Of a DNA stretch of 64,000 nucleotides, positions 22,301 to 51,600 are shown piece after piece. Made by a program: the position numbers and the translations under genes. The notes beneath the pieces were generated by a model. That model was not told the origin of the DNA and did no database searches. It saw only the letters and a program-made list of their open reading frames with translations. The stretch comes from Paragordius varius. Taxonomy: Eukaryota > Animalia > Nematomorpha. The DNA lies in assembly GCA_964247055.1 (NCBI GenBank), contig OZ176052.1, forward strand, positions 2,232,001 to 2,296,000, written 5' to 3'. The number at the start of each line of letters is the position of its first letter. Position 1 is the stretch's first letter.

Positions 22301-25300
22301 TCGTACCCGATGGTCTTCGATATCCACCTGAGCAGTTTGCTATTATTAATGTTGTTGATGTCTCTCTTCCGCCCAAATAGTGACACTAGCGGTTTATGAT
22401 CTGTATATATCTCGAAAGGTCTTCCATATATAAAGTATTTAAATTTTTCTAGGGCAAACACTATGGCTTTGGCCTCTTTTTCGATCGTGGAATAACTCTT
22501 TTCTGCTATTGAACAAGTTCGTGACGCGTAAAAAATTGGGCGTTTCCCCTGTGGGGTCTTATGAAACAGTATTGCCCCAAACCCCTTGTTGGAAGCATCT
22601 GTTTCGATCAACAATGGAAAACGGTCGTTAAATGGCATTAAAGCGGGGGGCCTGGTTAGCAAGCTTTTTGCTTTCGCGAATTCACTATCATCTGCCGGGG
22701 TCCACCGCCAAGGTGTATTCTTTCCACTTAACTTGTGTAAGGTTGCTAGGTGTGGGTGACAGTTTGGTATAAACCGCTCATGAAAATTTATTAAGCCTAA
22801 GAACGAACGTAGCTCAGTTTTGTCTGTAGGTGTCGGACAATTTTTAATGGCCTCTAATTTTTCATTGGACGGCTCAATACCTTGGTCAGAAATCACGTAC
22901 CCCATGTATTTGACTCGTGAGATACCAATTTGCAATTTGTCTCGGTGCAATCGTAATCCCGCCTCTTGTAACCTTCTAAATACTTCCCTTAATCTTTGAT
23001 CATGTTCCTCCCTGGTAGCTCCGGAAATTAAGACATCATCCAGGTACACACAAATACCAGGTATGTCCTTTAAAAGATTGTCCATGCATCTTTGAAAGAT
23101 AATAGGTGCTGAAGTTAATCCGAATGGAAGTCGCTGGTAAGCATAAAACCCTTTGTGAGTTGTGATGGTTACTAGCGTCTGTGACGCCCGGTCTATCGGA
23201 AATTGTAAGTAAGCATCTTTAAGGTCTAAAGTGGAAAAAATTATCCCATTTGCCACTTTGGTGGCCAACTCGTCAAAAGTAGGTATCAGATGAGAATCTT
23301 TTGCTAAATAACGGTTGATACTAATTCGGAAATCGGCACATATCCTAATTTCTCCATTTCCTTTAACTATATTTACTGTGGGAGAGGCCCATGTTATTGG
23401 GGTTTGGGTCGGATCGATAGGTCGGAGTATTTTGAGTTTAACTAATCTATCAATTTCATTTTCTACTAAAGGTTTTAGAGTTAAAGGTACCCTACGACAA
23501 GGAAAAACTTTAGGTTTGGCCCCGGGGTCGATAAATAATTTTATTGGGGGCCCCTTGAAAGTACCTAACTCGTCTGAAAACAATTTGTCAAAATAATCAA
23601 ATAACATTTTATTATTAGGTGCTTGCGTATGTAAAACTGAAAAAACATTTTTTGGGAATTCTAACCGAAACACCCGCATCCAATTCATCCCGAACACTGC
23701 TGGCGGGTTAGTTTGCGTCACCACGCAGGGCAGGCACTTCTCCTCTTCGTTCAAAACCACTGAAATCATCGATTTTCCGAGTACTTCTATCGGGCCATCA
23801 TTGTAGGTTCGCAAATTTGGAGCTGGGAGCAAACGAGGTCGACCAATATTTACCCAAGTGCGCTTGCCAATAACGGATACCTCGGCGCCCGTATCGTAGA
23901 TAAACGTTGTTGGTATATTATTTATTAATACTTGAATCCGGGGGGTGTTGTTCGGGCTAGTCATGGTGCGGATTGACGGCCGTCGGAACGTTGCCTTGCA
24001 TACTGTGCTGAAATGATTCCATTTGTCGCAATTGAAACACCGTTTTCCTTTTGCCGGACAGGTGGCGGAACCATGTCGATACCCACAATTACTACATAGC
24101 TTTCGGGTTATTTGATTGATTGTATTATTATCATTAACAACTGGTTGGATACTTGAAGGAAGTTCACTGGTATTATTATTGTTCATATCATTATTATCTC
24201 TGATGTTGTGAACCTTTTTATCTTCTAATTCATAGGAATAAGCGATGTCTACAATCGCTTGAAGGGGTACCGGACCCCCGTCCTTTTTGCCATCTGGATA
24301 TTTGGATTGAATTTCGCGTTCTACTCTGGGATTTTCAAGACCTACTAGGAATAAATCGCGTAATTTTGACTGAATATCCCCTTCAAATTTCCCGGCTTCA
24401 CACTTTGCCTTCAGACGTTCCAGGAAATCCATGACTGATTCATCTGGCATTTTTTTTAATCGGTAGAATTCAACTCGATTTAACCATAGGCTGCTGATTG
24501 GTGAATATATCTGAGTGGCCAAGGTTGCAATTTCCTCCCATTCCATGTCATCTATGAGTTTTGGGTATGCTAACGTTTCGATTTTCATTATTACTTGAAT
24601 ACCGCCGAAAGCGAGAAAAGTGCGTTTCATTGTGGTGTCATTGGATTCGATATTTTTGGAATTTAAGACTCTCCTGATGTGACGTATATATTGCGTAAAA
24701 TTCATCGGCTCCTTAAAAGGCTCCAAAATCAGTTTTGAAATGTCCAACGCTTGGCTCATTGAAAGCTAATACGGCACCAAATGTAAGGTTGATTTATTCA
24801 CGTATAGCAGTATGGTATAATAAAATAGAGTTGAGCGATAAAAAGAAAAACCAAAATAAAAAAGTGAGTTGCTATTATATCACAAGTTCTTTTTATGTGT
24901 GCATGCCTTATTTGCGCAGACGTTACACAATGGTTATTCTCAACAACAGATAAGCTTTAACACGAAATATATATATAATATTCAAATACAAAATAACTGA
25001 TGCAACATGAATTGAGTGTGTTAACAAAATAGAATATTATAACCTTACAGGTACGAATTACAAAAGTTTAAGAAGCCCTGTAAAAGAAAAGTCAATACAA
25101 AAATAAAAGACAACATTTCGTTTAAAAGGAGCATTTATTATTAACAAGATTTTTTGGTCAAATTAAAAGTTTTTCATTTAATGTGTTTTTAAATCAAAAA
25201 TTTCCAGCTATTATGGTCCAAAATTTTGTCTCAAATTAATAAACATTTTCCAAAAAATATATAAAATAATAATTAAGTAGAAGAATAATATACGTGGGAA

Positions 25301-29100: not shown

Positions 29101-29855
29101 TAATATTTTTACGTGAACGTAACTAAATGTCAAAAAGGAGGTGGTTCATATTTTGGGAATCATAAATGGCTATTTATTAAAAACCGTATCAGACGAGTAA
29201 TGCAGGAAAAACCAAAAAATTTAAATGATATTTTGCTTATTTTCTAAAACAAAGAGGTAAAATGAATCAACTTACAAAATAGGTTAAAAAAAGAGATATT
29301 GTTTAGAATTAAATTGGCTGAGTGTTTTGATTGCACTCAACAAAATCACGATATTCGCTTTGACCGTCGCCTGTATGAAAGCTTAACATATTTAGATATA
29401 TTGACTTTTTAATTATCACATCAAAATATTTGTACTGGTATAAGGTAATACTGTATACTGTATATCATCTACTAGCTAGCTGAATCTTTAGTATTATAAA
29501 CATTAAAAAGGCTGTTAAACTTTAGAAAAAGTTATTTCTGGTAATTGTATATTATTATCAAAGAGGGAAAAATCAGATAATTTTTGTTAATAATTCATAG
29601 TATGTATTATATTTTGGGTTAGCAATCCATCATAAGATAATTTTAATTAAAAAATGACACTTTGGTGAGATTATAGCCAATAAAATTAAAAAATGCGGTA
29701 AAATGTTTTAATTTTATTTTAAAATGAACACATAAAAAATTGTTTTGATTTACACCATATAAAAAAGATGAACCATAATTTACAAGATGTTCCCTTTTTT
29801 TAGTTTAAATTAAATTTTGGGCTTTATCGAATTTTACTTTCAAATTTAAAAAAAA

Positions 29856-29971
29856 ATTACGACACCCGGGATTCCCAGGCGGTCACCCATCCAAGTACTA
29901 ACCGGGCTCAACGTTGCTTAACTTCGGTGTTCGGAAGGGAACCGGTGCTTTCAACGTGATATGGTCGTAAT
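29856..29971 (-). rRNA. 5S rRNA gene, single dispersed copy
   Basis: ATTACGACCATATCACGTTGAAAGCACCGGTTCCC...CCGAAGTTAAGCAACGTTGAGCCCGGTTAGTACTTGGATGGGTGACCGCCTGGGAATCCCGGGTGTCGTAAT has box A and box C, a perfect terminal helix and a T-run Pol III terminator. Confidence 0.96.
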
Positions 29972-30272
29972 ATATTTGTTAAAAATTGAAATATAACTTA
30001 TATTTTGTTTTTACTACACAAAACTTTTTCTTGGACGAATCGATTTAGGGGAAAAGAAATCAAAATTCTAGTAAAGGACGCATGTCGTCAATCTCTGCGC
30101 ACTATGTTAATTTAATATTGTAATTAGTGCCATTGGCATAATTTGGGAATTTATATATCTTATATAATCACCTATGTGTTTATATTTTATAAAATATTCC
30201 GCTTAATACGCTGCCTTGGGTTTGATACACGAAATACAAATATATTTCAATGGCATATTTCTTTAACACTTC

Positions 30273-32709: not shown

Positions 32710-35700
32710 TTAAATACAATGGTACAATTTATTGGCATTAACGATAAAACTTGAGGGCTCCTGAAAGTCTCTGGTAATCCCAAATTCTACATTACACTAA
32801 AATAAAAAATTAAATTTATAACCATGCGATCATATATAACATTAAAATTACAAATATTTAAGGTTTACATAATGTTCATTTAACCATAACAATTTAAACC
32901 TACACTATTAGACAAAAACATTTTATATTATTATCGAAAATATAATTACAAAAAGATCATAAACATCACATTTTTTCACCAAATATGTAATAAATTTAAT
33001 GATAAAAGTCGCAAAATAATAGCTACCTTTGGACAAACGTCGTCGAGTAGGTTTATGAAAAGCTGAACCACTTTGTAATGCTTCCAATAAGCTATCCATA
33101 ACACCTTCGTGTTCACCCTCTAAGTATGGAAACATATTAATTAAAACTTATTTTAATTTTATTTTTGTTTTAATTTTAATAAAATTAGAAGATTTTTTAA
33201 CGATAATAATATAAATAATAATATTTTTATTAATTTCGCCGATTAATAATATATAGCCTGCGTAACCTTTGTTGTAACATAATAAGTTATGCAAGTAGAG
33301 ATTGGACCCAATTAAAAAAAAGTTGATAATTACTAATAATCAATTTTCAAGTGTACCCCATAACTTGTATAAAATCATAAAATAAAAAATTGATTATTTC
33401 ACAGTTTGTAATATTTATTAATTTTTACGTTAGTCCTGATTCTCAAAAAAGAAAATATTAACAATAAGTAATGAATGATATAATATAGTATATTAAACTA
33501 TCAGTTTCAATGTTATACAAAATTTCCATCCAATGTAATTTAGACAAAGTAATACTTCGTTTTTAGCAAATTATTCAATAGGTGTATAATTTTATTTTTA
33601 GGCCCATTTATACGGCCGTATAAGAATTTATTATTATCAACCTTTAAGGGTTTTTTTCTCCCGACAAGGAGGTAACCCTTTGGATAGCTCCACGCCATAA
33701 ATTCATTATTAATTATATATATAATTTTTAAATCAAAATCTTTTCATTTTGAGTCTAAAAAATTATAGTATGAGTAAGGATCCGTTTTTTCAATAGCATA
33801 GCATATGCAAAAAAAGCATTATTATTGGCTAATGGTAGTAAAAAGTAAAAAAAATAACTATACACCAATAATAGTACTTCCCATATGCATCTGGCAATAA
33901 ATGATAAACTAGTAATGCATCCTTACTAATACTGCAATATCCAATATATATAACCCTTTGATTAGATTTAAATCAAACTAAACCATGTTACTAATCTTCT
34001 TAATTAATTAACCTGCATTCATATCAACGATAGCTTTTCGCTTAAATTTATCCCGTTTTTCTTTTTCGATGCGTTCCCTGGTTTCTCGGGCCTTTTTTGA
34101 TTTTTCGTCGGCTTCCTTTATTTTATTGCATTCGGTTTGAGCTTTCTGAAATTTTAAGAAATAACATAATAAATTATAGCCTTAAACATGGATAATTTAA
34201 AAGTACATAAATTTATTTAAAAAATTTGTTGTATACTATGTACACTTCAAAAAAATTTAAAGAAAAAGTTCATAAATATTTATTGTAGATCAGTTTTTCG
34301 TACCTAACACTTGGAATTATTTTCCTAATATATATACTATTTTAATCTTTGCATTTGGGAAAATTTTACAGTTTAGAAATAAACCAGAAAATATAATTTA
34401 AAATAGTATATTACCATACCTGAAAATTAACAATAAATGCTTTAATGTCACTGAAAAAATCTTCCATTTGATACTTTTTGGTGTCAAAACAAAAATATGT
34501 GGCCATCTGAGCATAGGTTGCATCCATTTTATCGTACATACCCTTCAATATTCCGTATTGTTCTTCGGATTGGTTATAGAACTCGTATAATCATTCATAA
34601 ATAATTTGTATGAGTCAAGAATAATTATATTTTGTTTAACTTTTATATATAAATTAGAAACGATAAGAAGCGTGAAAAGTCATTTTTTGTAAAATTTATT
34701 AAATTAAAATGTCCATATTCTTAAAACATGACCTAATCCTAATGGTAAAATTAAGGCTTTATAACCATAGCCAGTTCGTTCAAAAAACTCTTTAATCACA
34801 GAAAAATAATTTTCGCGTTAAACTTTCAATTTTTGCGGCAACCTTTTCAAAACAAAATTTTCTTTAGAAACCATCATTGATATAAAATTTGAAATTCTCC
34901 TGAAAAAAAATTCGTTAAAAAAATAAAAAATGGTAAAAAGCATATCTTCATTATAGGTATAAATTTGTCCTTGTCAAAATTGTAGGTTGAATCACGTCCA
35001 CACAAATCCAATTCGGATTTTACGAGTTTAAGCGATGTCCCAAGTTGATTCAAAGTTTTGGTTATATTTTCTTGACACACTAAATGTAAAATTTAAAAAA
35101 AACGTAATTACAAAAAAAAACAGTAAATATTGAAATCATAAAGGCAAAAAGCGTAATTACAAAAAAAAAGTTAACCATATTTTTGGCCTTATTCTGTTTA
35201 ACATAGTATTATAATCTAACTCTTCTTTCCTCTCAATTTATATCCAAAACAATAGGTTATATTCAATATACAAGTTTTATAAAAAAGTATGGCTCCCTCT
35301 ACAAATTTATTTTTAACTGTACTTTTTCCCTTAAAATGTATCCAAAATAATTAAATTTAATAAGAATTAAACAAAAATTTAATGCTATATAAAGTATAAC
35401 CCTTTGAAGCCTTATCAATAAACGATAATTCCGTGAAAAAATCTTTGAGATCAGGATATGAGTTATCAATCGTTTGGACAAGAAAATGGAGTAACGTTGT
35501 AGTTTGATCATCACTTTTAGTATTTTGAATCTAATTTGTGTATAAAAAACTTAAGCACAATAATTAAATTTAAAAATTGTAATGCCATAATTGTTAAGAG
35601 GCTAATTTCGCAAAACATTATAAAAGACAAACAAATTTTCGTAGATCACAAAAGTATAATATCGAAAAGCGTAATTTTATAATTGCTAACTTGGTATCAT

Positions 35701-38700
35701 TTACTATTCAAATTCACCCCAAAATTAAACTATATGTTTTCGGGGTAATATAACTCATCATTAATATGAAATATATATTTATGGCATAGTTTATTCTTTT
35801 TTTTCAAATTTCATTTTAAACTAAATTTCATTTTTTAATTCTAAAAAATATAGATATTTTTTATTCTTAAAAGTATATATGATATTTTAGGATGACTTTG
35901 AATTGTTCAAGGGTAAATTTAAGTGTTGATGGAATATTAACAGAAGTTATTTATTGAGAGTAAAGATTGAAAAATTGTGATTTTCCTATGATTGGTATGA
36001 CCCCTTATAAAAAATAAAATATTTTTTCAAAAAAAATTGATTAATTACATGCTATAAATACAATTTGTTAAAATTCTACGTACCTTGGTTAAAAAACTAA
36101 GTTCAAAACCATAACTTTGAGCATTGTTTGAACCGGAATTCATATAATTCCCAATCAATAGTATGAGTTGTAACAATCGTTGGAATTTTTTACTTTTATT
36201 AATTTGATCACAACACCCAGAGACAGAAACGATTGCCTATTTAAAAAATAATCACAATCCATAATCAAAATCAAAATTGTAAAAAAGTCATCAAAAACTA
36301 AAGGATAAATATTTATAATGATGACAGATTAATTTTAAATTAATTTGAACGATACTAACTATAAATGTAGAATTAAGTGTGTGTTATGAATTAACTTCTC
36401 TCTATTCCATACTTTCCCAAAACGATAACCTTCATTAAAAAAAATAAGTATGGCTTTGAAAAAATATTTGTCTTTTTATACGCTTTGTATTTAAATTTGT
36501 ATTGTAATTATTGAGATATCAAGAAGAATGATAAATTCATTGAAAAAATTAATTTATATCCGTATTTTTAAACCTTGATTTCAAAGATATAATGAAAGTT
36601 TTGAAGTTTTGTGATAAAATGAATTGAAATGTAAATTGGCAAGAAAGTCATTATATATTTTACAATTATAATCATATAAAAGATTTTGTGGAAAAATAAA
36701 TATGTTTTCCTTATTAAAATATTTAGTTTTAAACCATAATTTTAACTGTTAAACCATTATAATATACCAAAAAATATATACAATTTAGAAAAATTTATAA
36801 AATAAGTTTCATACTGGTTTAATGTCAGACACCATTTCGTTATATTTAATTTTGAAACATATGCACTTCAATCGGGCTTCAATACGTTTGATTGGTGCAA
36901 TCTGCAAAAATAAAAAAAACGGATAAAATAATTAAAATAGAGTATGAAAATATATTTCTTCCAAACAATTTTTTTAAAGTGTTAATAAATTTTTATAATA
37001 AAATATAAGTTTAAATGGAGTGTAAAAAAATAAATTTTTTAGAATTTTTAAAAATAAAATTCCAATTTAAAAAAAAATAAAATGGAAATTCCCCATACCA
37101 TAACTAAAAATCTTTCGGCTTCATTTAACATGTCAGGCCTTTGACCATATTTTTGAGCTAAAGTGTCAATTCTTTCTTGTTCAGGTATGTATTTTATCAA
37201 TTGTTGCAAAATTTGATCATCTAATTTGGGTTGAGATGTGGATGTAATTAGGCTATTCCCATTCGTGGTTTGTGTTGAACTACACAAGGTCACAATATAA
37301 ATTGGATATAAATTTCACAATTTTGATTGCGGTAGCAATTAATTATTTGATTAAAAAACTGATCATGATTGCTCTTTTCAAATTTCAAATAGGAGAACAT
37401 CCTCCTAATTATTTGTAAGTAATAATCGTTTATGTCAAAAACTTGTGGTATTTTGGGGACATGATAATTAGTTAAAAAAATTATTCATATTAAAATATGT
37501 TTTATTGAATAATTTAATATTAAGACTTATTTGATATCGTATTTAATTTTAAATTTTCCCATTAAAGGGTCATATGCGTATTATGATCCATGTATTTTCT
37601 GTGGACATTATGGAAAGTAGGGGCGTATAGTATTATAACTGATATTCAATTATACCATTTACAGTTCAAATACACCCATGAATAATTTATATTTACCCTT
37701 GAACAATCAAATTCACCCTCGAACAATTCAAATTCACCCTAAAACAAATAAAATATGAAATACTGTTTAAATTTAATATAATGCTGAAAAATAATAAACT
37801 ACGTAGTAAAAATAAATTTCATAATCAATAATAAGTTATATTAGCCCGAAACACTTAATACATTTTTAGGGTGAATTTGAATTGTTCAAGGGTGAATTAG
37901 AATTGTGAATGGTATATATATATATACTATTTATAATAATTTTTTTAACCAAAATTTTACTCGATATCCGTCAAATTATTTGATTGAGAAGGTATAGAAT
38001 CAATGGGTAAGGGTTCATTGATGGACCAAATGAGATCACATATGGCTTCGTAAGGGAGTTTTATCGAACCCAAACATATTGCTAATGGAGAATATAATAA
38101 AATTTTGCAATTATTTAAGGCAAAATTATACTCAAATGAATAAAATTTATAAAAAGTAAGGCGTGTGTCTTACATATATTTTGAGCAGATTTGGCATCAA
38201 GGACTCTCAATTTGCGAACTTTTAGCGATTGAGATGTTTGATACGTCGATGAAAAATGTCCATTTCTATGCGTGTTATCACCCATGCTTGTATTACTGAA
38301 TACACCTATATGGACAAAAAAAGGATAAAAAGAAATCTTTCTAAGGAAAGATAATACAGATATTATAACCGTATAAAAAATTCATATTACTATTTAAATT
38401 ATCTTTTATAGTAATAACCAAACTTATTCTAGTATATAACAAAAATTTTGAATTTATAAAGATATTTATATACCAGAATGATTTAAAGCGCTATCATCAA
38501 ATTCATCATTATCGTTTCCATCATTTTCTGTCGCTGAGACATGTATATTGGATTTAGAATCACGAGCGTTTCCTATATATATATATATATATGACATATA
38601 ATATATTTAAAAATATTATATTGTATTGTAATATAATGGATTAGGATTCAAAGTTTTATATAATTATTGAAATTTCATTTATTAATTTATAGGTTAAAAA

Positions 38701-40169
38701 AATTATTTAAATCGAGATTTAAAATTTTTTGTTTGTTTTGTTATGGCTTGTATTTATTATAGCTTATAAACTGTTTAGTTGACATAATTTACCTTTTCAT
38801 TTCATTACCAGTTATAATGTTTAAACGAACAAAAACAATTTCCCTTTCATAGTTTAAAACATTCCTTCACTAATAACATTAATTATTTTAGCAATATACT
38901 AAGAATAAAGATAATAATTGGAATTCTCGTAATATTTATTAAATTGAACTATATTCAAAATTTTCGATACATACATGGTAGTATTTTTGTTCAAATATTA
39001 TTTTATTTATATTTTATCATTATTATTTTCTTTTTTTATTAGTTAATCCATTAAAAAAGATACTATCATGATTGTATCGAAAATTTTGAATATAGTTCAA
39101 TATAATAAAAATTTTACAAGAATTCAATATCTTAACATAAAACATTCGTTCTTTTTGACAATTAAACATACTTCGTTGTGTAGTTTGCGTAGCAAGACTA
39201 AATTTCTGACAAATTTGTTTAAAGAGCTCAGGCGTGGCTAAATCTTCCTCACAAACATTGGACCAAAACGAATTTTGAGATAATTTTTGTGGTGCAATCT
39301 ATTAAGCACAATATAAATATATATATTTAATCAATTTATTTTATTGATTTTATAAAAACTTGACAATTTTGTGGACAACTGTATATCGTCACATGAAATA
39401 TCGTTAACTATGATTTAGCAGAAAACAAAGCAAATATTTTTTGTTAACCAACAATATTATGAATGGATTAAAAATAATCCTTAAAACATCTAATAAAAAT
39501 TATCAGATAGATATAAAACTCAACAAAAAATTATTAGCATTGCAGGTTTAATCAACCGCTAACATACTACCTTTGTCCAATTGACACGTTTCAATTTCCG
39601 GTCAGGATCCCAACGCTTTTTAGGTCTCAGGTATTCAGGGAGAGCGTTTGTACCACAAGAATTTGTCATTATTGGAGCGGTTGCTGGACTTTTATTAATC
39701 ATAGGTGGTGGTGGTGGTGGCATAATAGCTCCTGTATTATCATTTTTTGTCATTGCCAATTTATTCATCATTTTAGGGAGCATGGGGGGAGGTGGGGGTG
39801 GGGGCGCTTTAATAAGGCCTGGAGGGGCAGGAATTCGCCCACTCAAACCTCCAGGGGGTAGAGGGGGTGGGGGAGGTACTACCCCACATGATTGTGTAGA
39901 TGTTGTTGAGGTTAAACACGTCTAAAAGGAAACATGGTAAAATTAGGGTTAAGAATATAAAACTACTGCATAGATACTATACAGTATGAGTAAAATTAAA
40001 CTGGATGATATCAGAGATTTGTGTATAATTATAAATTGTATACATATAATGCATAAAAAAATACTCATGGATATATATATATATAAGGTTCAGGCTTAAT
40101 AAATATAACAGCAGCGGCATTTTTGCTAGACAAGATTTTAATATAAATAATTTAGCAACAAAGAGACTC

Positions 40170-40217
<48 letters not shown>

Positions 40218-43200
40218 AAAATTAACAGGGGGATTTTAAGAGACAACTGCATAAGTATGGGGCTGAACATATAAATATTATAAATGAATAGAAAGATGAA
40301 TTTTAGAGTTTTTTTAAGCGTAACCAAATGAGGAATTATTCACAGCTAAAATTTTTCACTCGTATCTCTAAGAATGCAGGTAAGATATTTTGTCTAAAGC
40401 TTAACCATTATAAAGCATCGAAAAAAGTTCTAATATGGACTAATTTGTAAAAATCGTAATGAAGAAAAACGAGTCAACATCAACAGAAAGGGCCTGTAAA
40501 AATGGCTTGTTAATAATAAAGTGGCTAATACATTAATCGTACGACACTACTATAATTAATTGAATATTTATTTTTTAATTTTATACTGAATTACAACAAG
40601 CATTAACAACGAAATATCAACATAACATTAAAGCGAGGGGTAATCTAAAAAAACAATTAGTATAGGCATACAATGTGGCTTTGAAAAGAATTATTATTTA
40701 CTGATAAAAACTCTATATTTTCAGGATTTTATTTAAACGTAAAGATTAATATCTAACAGTCTTCAACCATTTTCTCATTAAAAAATAATATACAGAATAA
40801 CCAAAACGTTTCAATTTAACAGTCCATACTCTAAAAAAATTGAACTTTTCAATAAAATTACCATTGGATTTAGAGTTTCATACAAATTTTCAGCAAGGGC
40901 GTTATTATTTACATTTGCTGTGGAAATTGTGACATTTGTAGTAGGATTGGTGGTTGATTGTTGTGCATTTAATTGTTCCAAAGCTTGTTTAAGTTTAAGT
41001 TCCAGATGAGCACATTTAGCTTCGGCTTCGTGTCTGGCTACGATGGCTTCTTCGTAAGGAGATTTTGTATTATTAATATTTTGTGTCGTATTAAGGGTAG
41101 ATTGATGATAGATTATAGCTAAAAATGATTGAAAATATATACAATTTGTTTGATTCGATAATAATATCATTATAATACAGTAAAATTGATAGAAGTATAA
41201 GTATTAAAAAGGATCTAATATATCAGAGTTTTAAAAAATACAGAAAAACATGAAGAAATCAAAAGAAAAAACGTAAAAATCAAAAGGCAAATATTTTTTT
41301 TGGATAAAGACAGTCAGTCATACTTTATAAAAGCTTAATTTGTCACTTAATATTTTGGGTTGCAAAATAAGTAATAGAGATGTAAATCACAATTACATGG
41401 ATTTTGAATCGTAATAATTTAGGGCTATATGGAAAAAATCAACGATTTTGCTTAACTTTATAAAAAAATTAATTGTCTTCTAATTTTTATTGATGTAAAT
41501 GTTATTAAACCCTTAATTTTACCCTTAATAGGGTTCATTATAATATAAGATTACATAAAACAGCCCTAACATTTCAGCTATATGTAAAAAACGGATCTAA
41601 TGACACATTTTTAACTTTTAACTGTGGGAAAACTCCTATTCTCTCAGATATTTACGGCTTATTTCTATGAAGTCCTCATATATTTATTTGTCCAATAAAT
41701 TAACGTAGTTTCAAAAAAAAACTCTTATCAAATCTCAATTTTAAATCAATCAATCAATCTATTTTAAAAATCTCTTTACTTTACTTTTTTTTGACAAAAC
41801 AAATTATTTATTTTGGGTAAAAATGAATACCGTTTGGTAATCCACTGTTTCCAGAATTTAGATTGTTGGAATTACTCGATAGGCTGGTACATGATGTTGA
41901 TGATGCGTGATAAGGTAAAACGCCATTACCATACAACCCTGTAGGACAGCCATCAAGAGAGCCCGATTCACTTTTTCCCATAATCATTTCTTAGGGGGGG
42001 AAAATTTAGAAAATTGTTATTAAGTTTCAAAATTAATACAATAATCTTATTTATAATGAGTTTGTTTAGGAAAAAAACAGCAATTATTAAGTGATTCGTT
42101 CATGCTTATCATAATTCGCTTTTTTCCATAATTATTTCTTAGGGAAAAAATGCAAGAAAATTATTATTGACAAGTTTTCAAAAAATTAAAATTTATAAAA
42201 TGCCTCCCCCCTCTTAATGAGTATATAAGAAAACAGCACTCGCTTAATAAAATACACGATTCACTTTTTCCGTTCGTGAGTTCTAGAAAATGTTAAGAAG
42301 ATTATTACAAGTTTTCAAAAAATTAAAAATTTATATAATGTCCCCTCTCATAACTATCTTGGTTAAATTAACACTATAAACATATTAGCATAAGATTCAC
42401 TTTTTCTTATAATCAATTCTAATTTGCTTATTTTTAAGAAACTGCTTCAAATAAGCTTATATGATGATAATCATGCACTTTTTATCATTTCTTAAAAAAT
42501 TAGTTTTTATAATCGTTTTAAGTTAAGTATCCTCCCTTCACAAAAACCCTTATAGAGATATTTATGGGCCATTAAAATAAACCAAAAATACTATATATTT
42601 AATACTTTCCTACAAATATCTGTAGGATATTTTATTAAAGAAAAACTGAATAATTATTAAATCTAAATATAAAAAAATTCATTTTTTTTATAAATCGGGG
42701 TTATAATGGGGATTATAAGCGGCGTATTTTACGTTAATATTAGGATCATTATAAGCTACTGTAAAGTTAAAAATCATTTTTTAAAAACCAAAATTCACCA
42801 ATAATGGGCTCAACATTCATTTTGAATCGCCGTGAGCCCTTGTAATCTGGATCAAAGCCATTTTTGTGCAAAACGATTTGGGAAACGCACGTTTCAATAA
42901 GCTTGTAATAAGCTAGTCTATAGTGTGGAAATATATATATATATATATATTATTTAAAAAATATATGTTTGATATTCAAAAAAGTGAAATCAGCCTAATC
43001 ATTATTTATTATATATGAAACCAATTTTTTACAGATAAAATCACAGGGTTTAATATACAGTAGCGTATGGCATAAAACAATATTAGTCAATAAACGATTA
43101 AAAAAAGTGTATATACAACTAGGCTTGTTTTTTTTTAAAAAACATTTTTTTATTATTTTATGGACTAATAATGTTTTATACCATACGCTACTGTAAATAT

Positions 43201-46200
43201 TGAAAACCTAAATGTAAAAAAACATGAATTTGGACAGGGAATACATATTTTTAAAAGCATTTTATATAAAATTTTATCAATCAGTTCCAACATTTAAACG
43301 TAAAATTTCAGATCTTTTATAAATAAAAACTTTGAAGTATCATCGTCCTTTATACATAGAATATATTGGAGAATGGCTAAAAACGTATTTTCCAGCATGG
43401 CATTTCGCGACAATTGTCCCCGAATTACACGGAAACAATCATCAACATCTTCGAATTCAAAACGGACATCATCATATCTATTTTTTTAATTTTACCCGCA
43501 TAAAAAAATGAATTTCAAAATATATTCATTATTTTAAATAAAACTACAATTATATTATGCCAAAAATTCGAAAAAAAATTATTTCATACTTTAAAGAAAT
43601 TTTTATAATCGCATTCATTGCGCAGTAAAAAATATATTTATTTAATCAACAACAGAATTTTAGATTTTTATACTGGCAAACAATAATACCCGATGTGATC
43701 GCTTATATGTATGCAGTCAATTTGGACATAATTATTGAAAATGGTATATATATGTTATAACTAAATGGTGCAAAACAAAATTAATTAATGATATCCCACT
43801 TTTAATAATGTCAAAAATTTAAATATAATAATTAATATCCAAAATTGTCGAAATATTATATTTTACATGGATTATTTAAATTTAAACCATTATTTTATAT
43901 TATTTTATATCACATATCCCAATTCTGTTCATTTTTTTTCAACCGTATATTTTTTAAAGCGATCACAAACAAAAATGCATTAATAATCGGATAAAATCAA
44001 ACACCCTAATCAGCAAAGAATAATGTAATGAAAAGTATATAACCTATGTGCCAGCTCATCTCGATCCTCATCTCTTTGTTCGATAAAAATGTCATATTGT
44101 ACCTTGAAATCGGGTTTGAAACCATCCCTTGTTTGAGTAATCAACTAAAAATGTGCAATTAAAATAAAACATAAAATTTGATAAAAAATATAATAGATTT
44201 GAAAACTTTTATCGCATACAAAACAAGTGGGAATTATGGCGAAAATACGTATATAAATAAAAATAAATAATTAATTGTCCTTTTTTATTCAAATTTCCCA
44301 TTATTAAAATAGAAAATTAAAAACTATTTTTTAAATGCCGATAATATATATATATATTCTTTATTGATAATACAAACATCGTATAAAAAAAATTTTTTCT
44401 CTCTTAATTACTTACATCCAAAACATTAGCCAAGCCACATCGAAAAAACTCATTCCGTAAATGAAGGCGAAAATCTAAATCTTCAGGTGTACTTACGATA
44501 GCATTAACGAATTGCATGCATGAAACCTATTAATGTAATTATTTTTTGGGTATTTAATAAATCGAAATTTGCCATAATTAATCACAGTAAAAAATAATAT
44601 GGATAAAACGGAAAAAGCAACCAAAATAACCAAATATATTATAACTTACTTAAATGATAGTTATTAATTATAATTGGAAAAATAATCACCACTCCTGATC
44701 AATAGATGTTAAAAACGAAAGGTATTATTAATCTTTTATTTTTTCTCGTAATAAAATACTTAAAAATGAATATATTTAATTATAGGTTTTATTTCAAAAA
44801 AAATATAAAATAAATATATTAGTCTTTAACTTTTATATACGTTTTTTTCATGTTTCTACTTACTGTATGATGGATGTTATAAGTTAAAAAATAATTTAAA
44901 AAAGGAAATTTATATAGGTTAGTTACCTGTAAAACTAAATTATCACGCAATTCAAGACCATTAACTATGGGTTGAAATCGGTCCATATCATCATCATCCC
45001 AGCTAACGGTTAAGGCTTGTAGGACACGACCATGCCTTATTTTCATATTCAGTCAAGTAAAAATTAATATATATTATATTACTAACTATTTCCAGTTCAA
45101 TTTCATTCTTGAAAATTCAAATTCACCCTTGAACAATTCAAATTACCCTAAAAATAAATTATGTGTTTTTGAACTAATATAACTCATTTTAATATGAAAT
45201 ATATCTTTATGGCATAGTTTATTATTTTTTCAGTATAATTTTAATAATTTAAAATAAATTTTTATTTTACAAAAATATATATAAATTTAGGTAATTTTAA
45301 AAAACAAAGATTATATTGAATTCGAATTATTCGAGGGTTAATTCGAATAATGGTATATATAATATACTATTTAATGATGAAATTGTTTATAATCTTGGTT
45401 TTTTATTAAAAAAACGCGAAACTAAATAAAAAAATTATGTTTATATTCCATTATAAATTAATACTGTTTCTTTCAAAAATAACATTTTTTCCATCATTTT
45501 TCCCATTTGCACTTCAAGAGTGTCCTTGAACAGTTCAAATTGGTCCTTGAACAATTCAAGTTGGTTCTTGAACAATTCTAGAACAATTCAAGTTGGTCCT
45601 TGAACAATTCAAGTTGGTCCTTGAACATTTCAAGTTGGTCCTTGAACAATTCAAGTTGGTCCTTGAACATTTCAAGTTGGTCCTTGAACACTTTAAGTTG
45701 GTCCTTAAAATTTATAAATTTTGATTTAACCATAATTTTTGCATTTATTTTTTTATTTTATTATTTATTAACCTAATTTTCTTTATTTATTATATTATAT
45801 TTATTTAAAAACAAAATTCTTTATTGAAGAACTTTTTTGCTTAAAACTATTTTTTTCCAATTGAACAAAATTATTGACTTTTAAATGTTTTTAATGAAAA
45901 ATTAAAATTAATAACCCAGAAAACATATATATTTTTTCATTTCATGTTAAAATCCTATAAATATCCAAAATTATTTTACGAAATTAATAAAGGTATACGG
46001 TTTCTCAAAGATTAAAAGTTGTTATCGATTTAAAATTTATGTAAAATAATAGAAAATAGGTTAAAAACATTAAAATAGATGAATTATTTACGATTTGATT
46101 GATAAAAGTTAAAAACAAAACAAAAAAGTTAAAGGACCAACTTGAACTGTTCAAGGACACTCTTGAAGTGCAAATGGTATATAAACGATTGTAAGCCTTG

Positions 46201-47708
46201 AATAAACAGATATATAAAAATGCTGTAAAATATATCAAACCAATGTGATAAATAAATTTAAGCGAACAGTCTCTCATGATACAATCTCAATATATCCAGA
46301 TCCGTAGACTCAGCTACAACGGTCACATGCAAAGATTAGATAATGATAATTGGATTAAAAATATAGCAAATTCCAAGCCAAACATACAAAACAAAGTTGG
46401 TCGTCCAGCAATAACATGGGACAAAAACATTACCCAAGACTTACAGGCCAAAAACATATAAGCCGGGGACTGGTTAAACAAAAAATTCTTCAAAGCAATG
46501 ATCAAACACACAAACCCCGTCAAGACAGGATGCCAAGGGATCCCTTGACAACAGCCATCTATCTATCGTATCTACAAAGTAAAAACATTTCTTTGGCAAA
46601 AACACCGCATACCAATTATAAATGGCGAAAAAAGATTAATTGAGTATCAAAATATAGTAAGGTAAAACTTTAACCAAAATTAAATAAACAATTTTTTTAA
46701 AAATGGAAAAATAAAAGAGAATTAAATTACCCATCAGGCGGTACAAGGCAAAATGCAGCCATAATTTTTACTGTATCGTTCATTATGGCAGGGAATTTGG
46801 GATCCACCGATTTTGCCATCAAAATAATTGCATCAGGGTGAGACATTACAGTCGTTAGTCCAAACTATTTTTTGGTTAAATAAAATTTCCAATTATATTT
46901 TTCAGCAATATAAATTTTTTATTTACGAATCTCTTTATATATCCGTTTTTTATAAATGATAAATATCATTTGGTTATAAAATCCAGTAAAAATATAGTTT
47001 TTTTTCAAATTGTCATACCTTATTATTCATGAAAGCTTTGAGACATCGGATACATTCATGCTGTATCTTGATATTAATTTCATTGGGGTACCTAAAATTT
47101 GTTTAAGAGACAAATTATAATTTAGTTGTATTCAAAAAAACATTTTAACTCAGGGGTGTTCAACATACAGCCCGCGAGAAATTTTGAAATACAAAATTTA
47201 GCAAAATCTAAATGCAAGTGATTTTCTTAAACAAATTGTTAAAAATGAAAAGTTTAACATATATACTAGCAAAAAAAAGTTTTGTTTAAAATCTACAAAA
47301 TATTTGTAAATTCCCATGCATGTTTAACAACCCGCGAAACCATTTGTGTTGACATCATCCCTGTTTTAATTCAAACATTATAAAATGGTTTTATAATCTA
47401 CCTATCATATGATGCGGCCAAATTGGTTAATAATCCATTAAGTCCTCGTAAGCCAAATTCACGCACCCAGCTACAAAATGTAAAATAATAATGTATGAAG
47501 GAAAACAAAGTATATGGAATAAAAATTAAATTATGGGAAAAAAACAGATAAAGTAAAAGACAGATAAGAAATTTAATAAAAAAAACCATATTTTTAATTC
47601 TCGATTTTTTCTATATCTCGTAAATGATTAAGAAAGAGAAATTCATGTTTCTCTATTGCTTATTTTTCGCAACTCCAAAAGTTTATGTTATATACCAAAA
47701 AATTAGTG

Positions 47709-47743
<35 letters not shown>

Positions 47744-48648
47744 CCTCTACTCTCCTCCTGTTTTTATGATTTCTATTATTACATAAAACCAGAATCTCAA
47801 TATTTTCTCAAAATTTAACATAGATATGCATTGCTAAAGTAAACGCAAATCAAAAAAAATTACCTAACAGGGTTAGATTTAAGGGCAACACGTAAAGATT
47901 GAAGCCATCGGAGTAATTTAGTGGGATTCCCTTCATAATGATCCAAAAAACGGATGTAATCACTCGGCCCGGCAGCTTTTACAGCACCTTTCTATATTAA
48001 CAAAACAAAACAAAACTTTTTAAAACGTTTAATATAATTTTTTGGATGTAAAATGTGTTAAAAAAATTTTCATGATAATTTTATTTTGATTAATTAAATT
48101 TTATTATTAGAAATAGTATTTTAAGTCTCCAATTCGGTTAAAAAATATGTAAATATAAGGAGGAAGAATATGTAACACCACAATTTTATATAAAAACAAA
48201 ACTTTTTAAAACTTTTAATATGATTTTTTGAGGTAGAAAAATTTTTTTTCATGATAATATTCATTAAAATTTTATTATTAAAACTAGTATTTTAAGGTCT
48301 TCCATCCGGTTAAAAAAAATGTAAATATAAGGAAAAATGATAAATTTGCACACAAAGGCAGCCATTATAAGTAATTACATGAGAAACTCCACGTAAATGC
48401 ATAGATAACATTTCTCGTTTCATTTTAAGGTCTCTGTTTCGGAGTGGGGCTTTACGTTCTTCCGATAAATTCATATCCTCCTACAAAAATATAATTTTAA
48501 TTTTAACAAAAGTTTTTTTTCTGTAATAAATTTAAATAGAAATTTTGTAGTTTATATACCCTTAAAATTGAAATTATACAGTAGACACAATGTAAAAACG
48601 TCTAAAGACAAACATTGTTTAAAATAGATTGTAGTTTCTATAAACTTG

Positions 48649-48694
<46 letters not shown>

Positions 48695-51600
48695 CATTGC
48701 TTTAAACTACAAAGTATGTTATAGGCTGTAAATTAATGTTACATATTTCACAATAATAATTTATATAGATAAAAAAAAGTATGATGTCTTTTTTCACGTT
48801 TTGTTTGTGTAATTTTTTAAACTGTAAGTTTAAGCTTGTAAGTCCATCCAAAACGGTCAATTTAAACAACACTTTAACACATTAAAATATCAGTTTAAAT
48901 ATAAATGTTTCCTAGCATAGATATGTTTAAATTTTTAGAGTTTTATTCATGTAGTAAAAGTTGTAAAATGTAATAATATAAATTTTTATCATATGATAAT
49001 TGGCGTTATATGCCTAATTAACTATAACATTGTAAAAACGAAATCTATATATTTTAATAAGCGTAGGAGGAGAAACAATGCGGAGTTTTTAAGTAGTTAT
49101 AGTTGTTATATCGCGGTTAAATTCAATTTTTTTTAACTTAATCACCAAAAATGATTAAAATGTGTAAAAATAACTCTCTAAAAATCACAATAATGGCTTA
49201 TTAAAAAAACTTATCGTAAGTGATTGCTAAAAAATATTTAAATACATTAAATTACAGTACCATTATTTTCCCGCTAATAATATTACTTATTATAAGAATA
49301 TTTTATGTTAATTTCATAAAACAATTACTAATGGTTCGCTAGATAAATTTTCTTCAACAATAATTATTATTTATAACATTTTTGTGATTTAAATTGTTTA
49401 ACAAATAATAGAAAAGATTGGTACTAAATTATATGATATCTGAAACCAATAAAAAGAACAAAATAAGTTATGAAAGTGTGTGTATACCAACATATTTTCA
49501 AATTTGGTATTTATTTCATCCTCAGGCCAATTGGCAATATCGGTGTTAGATCCTGCAAAATTTATTGCTGTACCATAGATATCATTGGTAACTGTATTAA
49601 AAAAATTCAAATATATTATAAAATAATATGACTCATATATAAGTATAGTTTAAATGCCAAAAAATATAACATATACTATATATATATGCATTTGCATTGA
49701 TATTAATAAGGCCATTGTCAATGTATGTTTGATTTTAAATTTAACGTAAAAATGACAATGGTTACCAAGCTTACCATATATTTAAATTTAAAATCAAAAC
49801 TGTATAAATTAGTTAAATTCTATAAATATGTTAATTATTCAGAAAGGTAAAACATTTTCGTAAACTCCTTTTATAAATAAATATTTCAGAGTTTTGATGA
49901 TAAGAAAGTGAAATTACAATCCTGAAATTAATGAGGATTAGTTGTTTGATTTAGAAATAAAGCATTAACCCTTATATCATAGAACGAATGGATTGAAACT
50001 GAAACTAAACCATCAGTCTTTTAACCGTAAACAGTCAAAAAGCGGTTCAAGAAAATTTTTTTCCGTTTAATAGAGTGTTAACCTTAACTATTTTTTACTT
50101 TATTTCAATATTCAAAAACAAATTTTTTAGAGATTATTTCGTTTTTTTTATCCCATGGTAGTGCAAATATATATAATATATATAATGAAAAAATACCTAT
50201 TTTACCAAAAAACAAGGGAACCGTAATAACATTGTTGCATAAATAAAAACTCCTTGTAACTTATCGTTTAAGACCCATTTTTATGCAAACAAAAGCGGAG
50301 AAAAAATATTCCGAAAACCAAAATGACAACATAAACACTTCTAGTATTAGAGACTCATAATATTAGTTAATATTGTGGATGTTAGTATATTTATATTATA
50401 AATTTTTGATTTTTTGGTTGTTTAATAAATTATGCGTAAGAAATATGGACCGAAATATAAACTAACCTACCTGCAGTTGATGATAAGGCTGTCGTCGTAC
50501 CAGTTATAGCACCAAGCGAAGCCATCCCCAAATTAATATTGTGATAAATGTCGCGAAATAAATTGGTAGAAACAACTGCTGAGGCCTGTTGAAGGGAATT
50601 CAGGGTTCCTGCACTACCATGTAATAGAGTTGCTTTAGAGCATTTTTTATTCCGAGAATGTAAAAATGTTGTTGGATGTGCCGGCCCAGGTGGATCATAA
50701 TTGGAGGAACTGGCGTTAGAGGCCAAACTTAAGTTATCATCACTGGTCATGGAGGTTCGAATCGCAGTGTTTACATTAGAACAATTATTTGCGACGCCGT
50801 TACCATAATTGCAATAATGAGGATTATTATTTGTGAATGTTGTTGACTAATGAATACAGTGGTAGGTTTAAATAAAAGAATATTTGTAGCAAAGAAATTA
50901 ATATTAGGAGTAAAAAATGAATATTAGTTAAAATAAAAAGAAACAAAGGGCCATGGTGCACGAGCATACTCATTAAATAATAATTATTTTATGCTATTTA
51001 CTAATGAAGGGGTAGTATGGTTTTATATACTCAATAAATGCCCTTCCTTTCCTTTTTTTTCTTTCACTAATACAAAAAAAATAATTATTAATGCTTGCTT
51101 GTGCACCATGGCCCTCTGTTTCTTTTTCTTTATTTTCACTAATATTCATTTTTTTACTCCTAATATATTAATTTCTTTATTACAAATATTCTTTAATTTA
51201 TAAATTTATACATAGGTTTTAATTATCTAATATTAGTATTTTAATACAGACACGCTATAAATATTATATATAAAAACATTTAAAATAAAATTTAGATTGA
51301 AATGAACGCGTTTGATTGCTATTGAATTAACATTAAATGAAAAGTATCTTAAATCAGTTTCATAACTTCGAAAAAATTGAAAATGAATATATCCTCCTTA
51401 ATTTAAGTAGAAAACTTCAAAACACAGGAACTTAGATTATGAGAAAGAATAAAACGTTAATTATTATCTAAAAAGTTTAAACAAGCATTTTTTAAACAAA
51501 AATACATTTGAAGTGCCATGTGGAGTCCCTGTAAAAAATTTGGCTCCTAAACGCCCCCTTTCTTTTTTAGCTTTTTTGGATTGGGATGAATTATTCATGT

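What the first reader, a model, noticed from the sequence alone, without database searches (positions are those of the whole stretch)
34585..34945. AT-AC intron in Diaphanous with a deviant minor-class 5' splice site (ATATGCTT) and a distant branch point
Seen: the FH2 frame can only be joined through AT...AC termini (IMK|EFY). Established: U12-type introns have a nearly invariant RTATCCTT donor and a CCTTRAY branch point usually ~10-20 nt from the 3' end. I recall that vertebrate DIAPH genes have an AT-AC intron at this position. Here +5 is G rather than C, and the best branch motif (TTCTTGAC, A at 34615) is 30 nt upstream. Inference: this lineage keeps a minor spliceosome with co-evolved U11/U6atac/U12, or it splices a relic AT-AC intron by a relaxed or major-type mechanism. 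Either would be notable in a genome that also has ~23-nt introns.
Basis: partly seen in the sequence, partly recalled or inferred. Interest (0 to 1): 0.8.

Follow-up and report, generated by a model that had tools for sequence, protein, structure and literature searches.

The report
Worn minor-type intron in hairworm Diaphanous
This is the hairworm copy of an ancient minor-spliceosome (AT-AC) intron in the Diaphanous formin gene; in this species it has one base change at a normally invariant donor position, so it looks like a minor intron caught partway to being handled by the major spliceosome, a known kind of transition and not a new mechanism.

Summary
A Diaphanous-type formin gene lies on the minus strand. 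Its FH2 exons ending at 34946 (…DKFIPIMK) and starting at 34584 (EFYNQSEEQY…) join only through a 361-nt intron: ATATGCTTT … TTCTTGAC (branch A at 34615, 30 nt from the end) … TATAC.

The site is an old U12 site. The hairworm Gordionus has, at the same codon and phase, a textbook ATATCCTTTT … TCCTTAAC … AC intron, and its branch A is also 30 nt from the 3' end. A hemichordate, a wasp (GT-AG subtype) and three unnamed invertebrate contigs also carry U12-type introns there. A millipede has a converted GTAAGCTT relic, and a nematode and a mite have lost the intron.

So the distant branch point is ancestral to hairworms. Only the G at +5 and one C>T in the branch motif are new here. Co-evolved snRNAs are unlikely.

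No RNA data exist, and the G itself was not checked against reads. My reading is a "minor-like" transitional intron, about 50% already spliced at least partly by the major spliceosome and about 35% still purely minor.

The scan has earlier, unchecked notes of both textbook and degenerate AT-AC introns elsewhere in this genome, but not of this intron.

The parts
33028..49571 (-). Diaphanous-type formin gene (the part matched to Gordionus XP_065320815.1 residues 211-1238): GBD/FH3, FH1, FH2 and DAD
   Evidence: tblastn of P0002 against the window, with exon identities of 45-95%. Eighteen introns were set: 17 GT-AG and 1 AT-AC.
34946..35079 (-). Upstream FH2 exon, (V)CQENITKTLNQLGTSLKLVKSELDLCGRDSTYNFDKDKFIPIMK, ending with A-2 G-1
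34585..34945 (-). AT-AC intron, 361 nt, phase 0
   Evidence: Orthologous to Gordionus L001:63147-63332.
34937..34945 (-). Donor ATATGCTTT: 8 of 9 match the U12 AT-AC consensus ATATCCTTT. The exception is G at +5 (34941).
   Evidence: Identity to Gordionus at +3..+9 is 6/7, against a mean of 2.9/7 in 16 U2 intron pairs of the same gene.
34614..34621 (-). Branch-site motif TTCTTGAC (7/8 to TCCTTRAY), branch A at 34615, 30 nt from the 3' end
   Evidence: Gordionus has TCCTTAAC at the identical distance. The 10-nt block is 8/10 identical (background 3.9/10).
34585..34594 (-). Conserved 3' terminal block ATGATTATAC, ending in AC
   Evidence: 9/10 identical to Gordionus ATGATTAAAC (background 4.6/10)
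34420..34584 (-). Downstream FH2 exon, EFYNQSEEQYGILKGMYDKMDATYAQMATYFCFDTKKYQMEDFFSDIKAFIVNFQ
   Evidence: Matches mDia1 FH2 structures at E=1.8e-7. 156 relatives found at E<=1e-3.

Best explanation
The intron is this hairworm's copy of the ancient U12-type AT-AC intron that sits between the last two helices of the Diaphanous FH2 domain (phase 0, ...D(K/R)F..xM.|xF...) in many animals.

Shown: it is orthologous. It keeps the AT and AC ends, the rest of the U12 donor (ATAT-CTTT), a branch motif that can still pair with U12, and the hairworm-specific 30-nt branch-to-3' spacing. These blocks are far more conserved between two hairworm genera than anything in the gene's U2 introns.

Derived in this lineage: C>G at +5 of the donor, a position that pairs with U11 and U6atac, and C>T in the CC of the branch motif.

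Inferred: +5 G is the one change that both damages minor-spliceosome pairing and creates the key U1/U6 contact. The intron also has A-2 G-1, a G at exon +1, phase 0 and a U2-like branch distance. The gene's own U2 donors are very loose (AG|GTAWKW, no pyrimidine tract). I therefore read it as a 'minor-like' transitional intron that is now removed at the same AT/AC ends at least partly by the major spliceosome (AT-AC type II route), with any remaining minor-spliceosome use weakened. Which spliceosome acts is not shown.
For: Orthology and ancestry:
- Gordionus has ATATCCTTTT...TCCTTAAC(30 nt)...AC at the same codon.
- The hemichordate Glandiceps has ATATCCTTTA...TCCTTGAC(10 nt)...AC.
- The wasp Vespa has GTATCCTTTC...TCCTTAAC...AG.
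- L005, L006 and L010 all have ATATCC donors.
- 34 clusters of read-through ORFs end in xAC-type codons at this site.

Constraint: donor 6/7, branch block 8/10 and last ten 9/10 identical to Gordionus, against 2.9/7, 3.9/10 and 4.6/10 in 16 U2 intron pairs. The joint p is about 5e-7.

Tilt towards the major spliceosome:
- C5 and C6 pair with U11 G6/7 and U6atac G14/15, and the CC5/6GG mutant abolishes U12 splicing (PMC4980772).
- In the minor-like intron class, A-2G-1, a weakened branch CC, a longer branch distance and phase 0 go with major-spliceosome use (PMC11347168).
- U2-type AT-AC introns exist (PMC1557818).
- The local U2 donors have G at +5 in 6/17 and T at +4 in 6/17, and the pyrimidine content of the last 25 nt is 12 here against 13.6±2.9.
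- The millipede orthologue GTAAGCTTAAC...GCCTTAAT...CAG shows that this same site has converted elsewhere while keeping CTT and branch relics.
- Unchecked notes report two AT-AC introns without U12 marks in this genome.
Against: - No RNA, lariat or snRNA data are available.
- Eight of nine donor positions and a pairing-competent branch motif remain, as expected if the minor spliceosome still does the work.
- Both branch-motif changes (C>U, A>G) keep pairing through G·U wobble.
- TTCTTGAC serves an otherwise canonical orthologue (L006).
- In the P120 reporter the 5'ss CC5/6GG mutant was not rescued at the AT donor by the major spliceosome; cryptic sites were used instead (PMC4980772).
- U2-type AT-AC introns are very rare (15 against 169 U12-type AT-AC in human; PMC1557818).
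- The G at 34941 was not confirmed by reads.
Confidence: 0.5

Rival explanations
1. It is still an ordinary U12-dependent intron. The minor spliceosome tolerates the single +5 mismatch, helped by cooperative U11/U12 binding to a usable branch site, perhaps with lower efficiency.
For: - AT-AC ends, 8/9 of the donor, and a branch motif with wobble-compatible changes at the conserved 30-nt spacing.
- Strong conservation of all three blocks against the U2 intron background.
- TTCTTGAC works with a canonical donor in L006.
- By a rough position-by-position estimate from remembered frequencies (inference), +4, +6 to +9 and the branch motif would still favour the U12 class.
- Unchecked notes say the minor spliceosome is active in this genome.
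Against: - +5 pairs with both U11 and U6atac (PMC4980772), and from general knowledge of the family it is among the least variable U12 positions.
- All five other AT-A(C/G) orthologues checked have C there.
- The intron has two hits on U12 signals in one lineage, plus A-2G-1 and phase 0, which in PMC11347168 mark introns that do not respond to minor-spliceosome inhibition.
Confidence: 0.35
2. The G at 34941 is an assembly or sequencing error, or a rare allele, and the functional intron is a canonical ATATCCTT U12 intron.
For: No listed read record covers 34937-34945. The sample is visibly heterozygous, with divergent contigs at equal depth.
Against: A C/G error at a non-homopolymer site is unusual. 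The neighbouring contig 34560-34906 is identical to the window. The branch motif shows an independent U12-weakening change, which fits real drift.
Confidence: 0.08
3. Another junction is used: AT-AG three bases downstream (IMK|FY, one residue shorter) or TG-AG (IMKIFY).
For: An AG lies 3 nt inside the exon (TATACGAG|TTC). AT-AG U12 introns exist at this very site in L005.
Against: Gordionus has the same ACGAG context, and its RefSeq model uses AC|GAG. The residue before F is present in nearly all orthologues.
Confidence: 0.04
4. The lineage's U11 and U6atac have co-evolved to read G at +5.
For: None was found.
Against: Gordionus is canonical at this site. Unchecked notes list many ATATCCTT introns in the same genome, and these would be broken by such a change.
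Confidence: 0.03

Closest known systems
The U12-type AT-AC intron of Diaphanous-related formins (Gordionus sp. XP_065320815.1 locus; Glandiceps talaboti; vertebrate DIAPH genes listed as minor-intron genes)
   Same: Same codon position and phase, AT-AC ends, the ATAT.CTTT donor and a TCCTTRAC-type branch motif. The 30-nt branch distance is shared with Gordionus.
   Different: G instead of C at +5, and TTC instead of TCC in the branch motif. The intron is 361 nt against 186 nt in Gordionus.
U2-type AT-AC (type II) introns, e.g. SCN4A/SCN5A (PMC1557818)
   Same: AT-AC ends with a donor that fits the U2 pattern apart from +1 (AAG|ATATG, +5 G). The branch distance is typical of U2 introns.
   Different: Known type II introns lack U12 donor and branch motifs, and this one keeps most of them. 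Dependence on U1/U2 is not shown.
'Minor-like' transitional introns (Olthof et al. 2024, PMC11347168)
   Same: A near-minor consensus with a lowered score, A-2G-1, a weakened CC in the branch motif, a long branch distance, phase 0, and orthologues spanning the minor, converted and lost states.
   Different: That class is mostly GT-AG, whereas this one keeps AT-AC ends. Their position weight matrices were not run here.
AT-AC introns without U12 marks noted in ARPC5 and TPI of this same genome (scan notes s1-373567, s1-373506)
   Same: Same genome, AT-AC ends kept, and an ancestral U12 site in the case of ARPC5.
   Different: Those are reported to have lost every U12 mark, while the Diaphanous intron has lost only two bases. 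The notes were not checked here.

Membership tests
U12-type (minor-class) AT-AC intron | AT...AC terminal dinucleotides | tested here: met
   ATATGC...TATAC at 34945/34585
U12-type (minor-class) AT-AC intron | C at +5 of the donor (pairs with U11 G and U6atac G) | tested here: not met
   G at 34941. The pairing role of C5/C6 is from PMC4980772.
U12-type (minor-class) AT-AC intron | Rest of the donor consensus, ATAT.CTTT (+1 to +4, +6 to +9) | tested here: met
   8 of 9 positions match, identical to Gordionus except at +5
U12-type (minor-class) AT-AC intron | TCCTTRAY branch motif near the 3' end (8-30 nt window in PMC1557818; usually 10-20 nt) | tested here: met
   TTCTTGAC matches 7/8, with the A 30 nt from the end, at the outer edge of the window. 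The spacing is the same in Gordionus. Such a motif arises by chance in about 5% of cases.
U12-type (minor-class) AT-AC intron | Orthology to U12-type introns at the same site in other species | tested here: met
   Gordionus, Glandiceps, Vespa, L005, L006 and L010
U12-type (minor-class) AT-AC intron | No polypyrimidine tract | tested here: inconclusive
   12 pyrimidines in the last 25 nt, but the gene's U2 introns have 13.6±2.9, so the feature does not discriminate here
U12-type (minor-class) AT-AC intron | Removal depends on U11/U12/U4atac/U6atac | not testable with these tools
   No RNA runs were found. No minor snRNA lies in the window.
U2-type AT-AC (type II) intron | Good match to the U2 donor apart from +1 | tested here: met
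   AAG|ATATGC fits the local pattern AG|GTAWKW at -2, -1, +2, +3, +4 (T in 6/17) and +5 (G in 6/17). C at +6 is rare (1/17).
U2-type AT-AC (type II) intron | Absence of U12 donor and branch motifs | tested here: not met
   The donor CTTT and TTCTTGAC are retained
U2-type AT-AC (type II) intron | Removal depends on U1/U2/U4/U6 | not testable with these tools
   No RNA data
Minor-like transitional intron (PMC11347168) | Near-minor consensus with major-type marks (A-2G-1, weakened branch CC, longer branch distance, phase 0) | tested here: met
   Exon end AAG, branch motif TTC for TCC, 30-nt distance, phase 0. The authors' PWM scoring was not run.

The most novel reading that the evidence does not exclude
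This hairworm is moving its AT-AC minor introns to the major spliceosome one by one while keeping the AT-AC ends. The Diaphanous intron would be the earliest stage (one donor and one branch-site change), and ARPC5 and TPI would be late stages. Together they would form a natural series for the U12-to-U2 conversion by the AT-AC type II route, in a genome with unusually loose U2 splice signals.
Probability: 0.3. Interest if true: 0.6.

Novelty: new member of a known kind. Interest (0 to 1): 0.4.

Why it matters
[quoted passage not shown] An intron with a canonical sister-genus orthologue and just one disabling and enabling donor change gives a clean natural test case. It could show how far the minor spliceosome tolerates a +5 mismatch, or how easily a major spliceosome with loose signal requirements takes over an AT-AC intron. 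On its own it is a modest evolutionary detail. It does not indicate altered snRNAs or a new splicing mechanism.

Tried and rejected
- **RNA evidence.** No run on record as RNA holds the stretch. The two RNA-guessed runs that were laid gave no contig on the gene.
- **Word search with the ORF that reads through the donor**: nothing was found, and the species is absent from the protein collection.
- **PDB search with the upstream exon alone**: no hit, because the exon is too weakly conserved.
- **Look-up of P0002**: not on record. It was solved through the longer product, P0153.
- **Other locus look-ups.** The Haliotis gene range is too long, so no DNA was returned. The Pollicipes locus was too short to use.
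- **A hairpin that might shorten the 30-nt branch-to-3' distance**: the window sequence gives z = -0.06 and Gordionus z = -2.2. This is not convincing and was dropped.
- **A canonical U12 intron in this window as a positive control**: none was found. The best-looking ATATCCTTG, at 6750(-), is coding sequence (WD40 ...HILVSGS).
- **Rfam**: no minor snRNA in the window.
- **Limits I kept to.** No full joined protein was built or searched; only ±10-codon joins were scored locally to set intron ends. The DNA of P0125 (a mammal-like DIAPH1 fragment, possibly human) was deliberately not fetched.

Full report
**What is there**

The window is AT-rich, at about 25% G+C. Between at least 49571 and 33028 on the minus strand it carries a Diaphanous-type formin gene. 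A tblastn of the best relative against the window matches exon after exon at 45-95% identity, from the GBD/FH3 region through FH1 and FH2 to a DAD motif that matches 14 of 14 residues (GVMDSLLEALQSGS).

The stretch in question reads as follows on the minus strand:
- The upstream exon ends ...GACAAATTTATACCTATAATGAAG at 34946.
- The intron starts ATATGCTTTTTACC.
- It ends ...ATTATTCTTGACTCATACAAATTATTTATGAATGATTATAC at 34585.
- The next exon starts GAGTTCTATAAC at 34584.

The intron is 361 nt long and in phase 0. +5 is G (34941). The A of TTCTTGAC is at 34615, 30 nt from the 3' end.

**Is AT-AC the only join?**

Reading through the donor meets a stop before the first GT. I scored every GT/GC-AG and AT-AC pair within tens of bases of the two exon ends against the orthologue. 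AT-AC at 34945/34585 scores 55. The next candidates score 38 or less and add or delete residues.

The downstream exon alone matches solved mDia1 FH2 structures (E = 1.8e-7). The joined sequence DKFIPIMK|EFYNQSEEQY is gapless against Gordionus DKFLENMK|EFYGKADENY.

Two alternatives cannot be excluded without cDNA. One is an AT-AG join 3 nt further in. The other is a TG-AG join.

**Whose intron is it?**

I ran a full HMMER scan of 1.84 billion representative proteins with the 55-residue downstream exon. It gave 156 hits at E <= 1e-3. The best full-length hit is XP_065320815.1, 'protein diaphanous homolog 2-like' of the hairworm Gordionus sp. m RMFG-2023. The window's own species is not in the collection. 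An earlier agent of this scan called the genome hairworm-like, which agrees.

In the Gordionus locus (L001) the same codon boundary holds a 186-nt intron. It reads GAAAATATGAAG|ATATCCTTTTATT ... AAATCCTTAACTCGATTTTAAATTGCGTTTATGATTAAAC|GAGTTTTAT. That is a textbook U12 AT-AC donor and branch motif, and its branch A is also exactly 30 nt from the 3' end.

**The site across animals (DNA checked)**

| Species or locus | State at this site |
|---|---|
| Gordionus sp. (hairworm), L001:63147-63332 | AT-AC: ATATCCTTTT ... TCCTTAAC, A 30 nt from the end |
| Glandiceps talaboti (hemichordate), L003:33135-33609 | AT-AC: ATATCCTTTAC ... TCCTTGAC, A 10 nt from the end |
| Vespa velutina (wasp), L009:22435-22529 | U12-type GT-AG: GTATCCTTTC ... 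TCCTTAAC, A 19 nt from the end |
| L005 (unnamed invertebrate contig) | AT-AG: ATATCCTTTT ... TCCTTGAC ... AG |
| L006 (unnamed invertebrate contig) | AT-AC: ATATCCTTTA ... TTCTTGAC, A 11 nt from the end |
| L010 (unnamed invertebrate contig) | AT-AC: ATATCCTG ... TCTTTAAT, A 10 nt from the end |
| Chamberlinius (millipede), L004:2908-2977 | U2-looking GTAAGCTTAAC ... GCCTTAAT ... CAG: a converted intron that still shows CTT and a branch relic |
| Soboliphyme (nematode) | No intron |
| Blomia (mite) | No intron |

At the protein level, 59 of the 150 listed clusters are unspliced ORFs that read through the acceptor. Of these, 34 end in H/Y/N/D (xAC-type codons), and 20 of the 34 carry the tripeptides that TCCTTRAC translates to. 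One of them, P0125, matches the mDia1 peptide over its first 20 exon residues ([20 protein letters not shown]). I did not fetch its DNA because it may be human.

The literature agrees. All diaphanous-related formin genes hold minor introns (PMC6865273), and DIAPH2 has an A-type minor intron (10.1101/2020.08.06.239418). The site is therefore an old U12 site with every known fate: kept, subtype-switched, converted and lost.

**What is new in this species**

Compared with Gordionus, only two signal bases differ:
- C>G at +5 of the donor.
- C>T at the second position of TCCTTRAC. The A>G at the R position is within the consensus.

The long branch distance is shared, so it is ancestral to hairworms and not a deviation of this genome.

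I compared the two species over 16 orthologous GT-AG introns of the same gene, whose sequences are otherwise at random-level identity:

| Measure | AT-AC intron | Mean of 16 U2 intron pairs |
|---|---|---|
| Donor +3..+9 identical | 6/7 | 2.9/7 |
| Block -38..-29 identical | 8/10 | 3.9/10 |
| Last ten bases identical | 9/10 | 4.6/10 |

The AT-AC intron is top or tied-top on each measure. The joint binomial p is about 5e-7. The U12 signals have therefore been under selection for most of the time since the two genera split.

A branch-like motif alone would arise by chance in about 5% of such 3' regions. It is the identical position that makes it convincing.

**Which spliceosome?**

This is not shown. 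No RNA run holds the gene.

Evidence for continued minor splicing:
- Eight of nine donor bases remain.
- Both branch-motif changes keep pairing with U12 through G·U wobble (inference from the established U12-branch site duplex).
- TTCTTGAC serves a canonical orthologue (L006).
- Unchecked notes report textbook U12 introns and a ZRSR2 gene in this genome.

Evidence for a shift to the major spliceosome:
- C5 and C6 pair with U11 G6/7 and U6atac G14/15, and the CC5/6GG mutant kills U12 splicing (PMC4980772).
- All five other AT-A(C/G) orthologues checked have C at +5.
- G at +5 is the hallmark U2 donor base.
- The exon ends A-2 G-1, the next exon starts with G, the intron is in phase 0 and the branch is 30 nt away. 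In the 'minor-like' class of Olthof et al., these features go with major-spliceosome binding and with no response to minor-spliceosome inhibition (PMC11347168).
- The gene's 17 U2 introns have very loose signals (AG|GTAWKW; +5 G in 6/17; no pyrimidine tract, 13.6±2.9 pyrimidines in the last 25 nt against 12 here). Apart from its end bases, the AT-AC intron looks like a local U2 intron.
- U2-type AT-AC introns exist but are rare: 15 against 169 U12-type AT-AC in human (PMC1557818).
- Two AT-AC introns without U12 marks are noted in this same genome (unchecked).
- The millipede relic shows that CTT and a branch remnant can outlast conversion.

I therefore commit to a transitional, 'minor-like' intron. 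My estimates are about 50% that the major spliceosome already removes it at least in part, about 35% that it is still purely minor, about 8% that the G is an error or a rare allele, and a few per cent each for another junction or for co-evolved snRNAs.

**Limits**

- The G at 34941 is not confirmed. The listed identical contig covers 34560-34906 only.
- No snRNA of this species could be examined. Rfam finds only a 5S gene in the window.
- No canonical U12 intron lies in this window to serve as an internal control.
- A hairpin that might shorten the branch-to-3' distance is not supported.
- No full spliced protein was built or searched. Only short local joins were scored to set intron ends.

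**Verdict**

This is a new member of a known kind: a degenerating U12-type AT-AC intron at a well-known minor-intron site. It is of moderate interest as a clean natural snapshot of minor-to-major drift.

Noticed in passing
window 29854-29972 (-): An intact 5S rRNA gene (116.5 bits) lies about 3 kb downstream of the formin gene's 3' end.
   Followed up: no
window 35652-36045, 37622-38015 and 33485-33878: Stretches inside formin introns have summed contig depths of 10^4 to 2x10^6 in the DNA-like runs, with many inverted and back-stepping joints. This points to a very abundant short repeat family (MITE- or satellite-like) inserted in these introns.
   Followed up: no
window 33716-34036 and 34288-34730: Divergent contigs (31 differences plus 19 gaps in X1; 27 plus 30 in X3) run beside identical ones (depths about 196 and 185 in X1). 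This suggests strongly diverged haplotypes in the introns.
   Followed up: no
window 44043-43478 (-) vs L001 intron after P0002 residue 518: The intron set here sits 7 nt upstream of the Gordionus intron (after ...AHR rather than after ...YDE). This is either intron sliding or a mis-set boundary in one model.
   Followed up: no
window 33120-49487 (-), the 17 GT-AG introns: U2 signals in this gene are very loose: the donors read GTAWKW with G at +5 in only 6/17, there is no clear pyrimidine tract, and the acceptors are mostly A/T-rich ...WAG. In this gene the introns are 92-1695 nt, although the same window is noted to hold 23-29 nt introns in TMX1.
   Followed up: partly
L004:2908-2977 (Chamberlinius hualienensis): The millipede orthologue of the intron is a 70-nt GT-AG intron, GTAAGCTTAAC...GCCTTAAT(12 nt)CAG. 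It looks like a converted U12 intron that still shows relics of the donor and branch motifs.
   Followed up: partly
window 6716-7803 (-): WD40-repeat coding exons (...[20 protein letters not shown]). The ATATCCTTG at 6750 is coding sequence, not a U12 donor.
   Followed up: partly
window 20001-24000: A G+C-rich island (0.38-0.42) stands out against a background of about 0.25.
   Followed up: no
L001 (Gordionus) vs window: The Gordionus orthologue spans about 64 kb with introns up to 9 kb. The part of the gene matched in this window (Gordionus residues 211-1238) spans about 17 kb here, against about 23 kb for the same residues in Gordionus.
   Followed up: no
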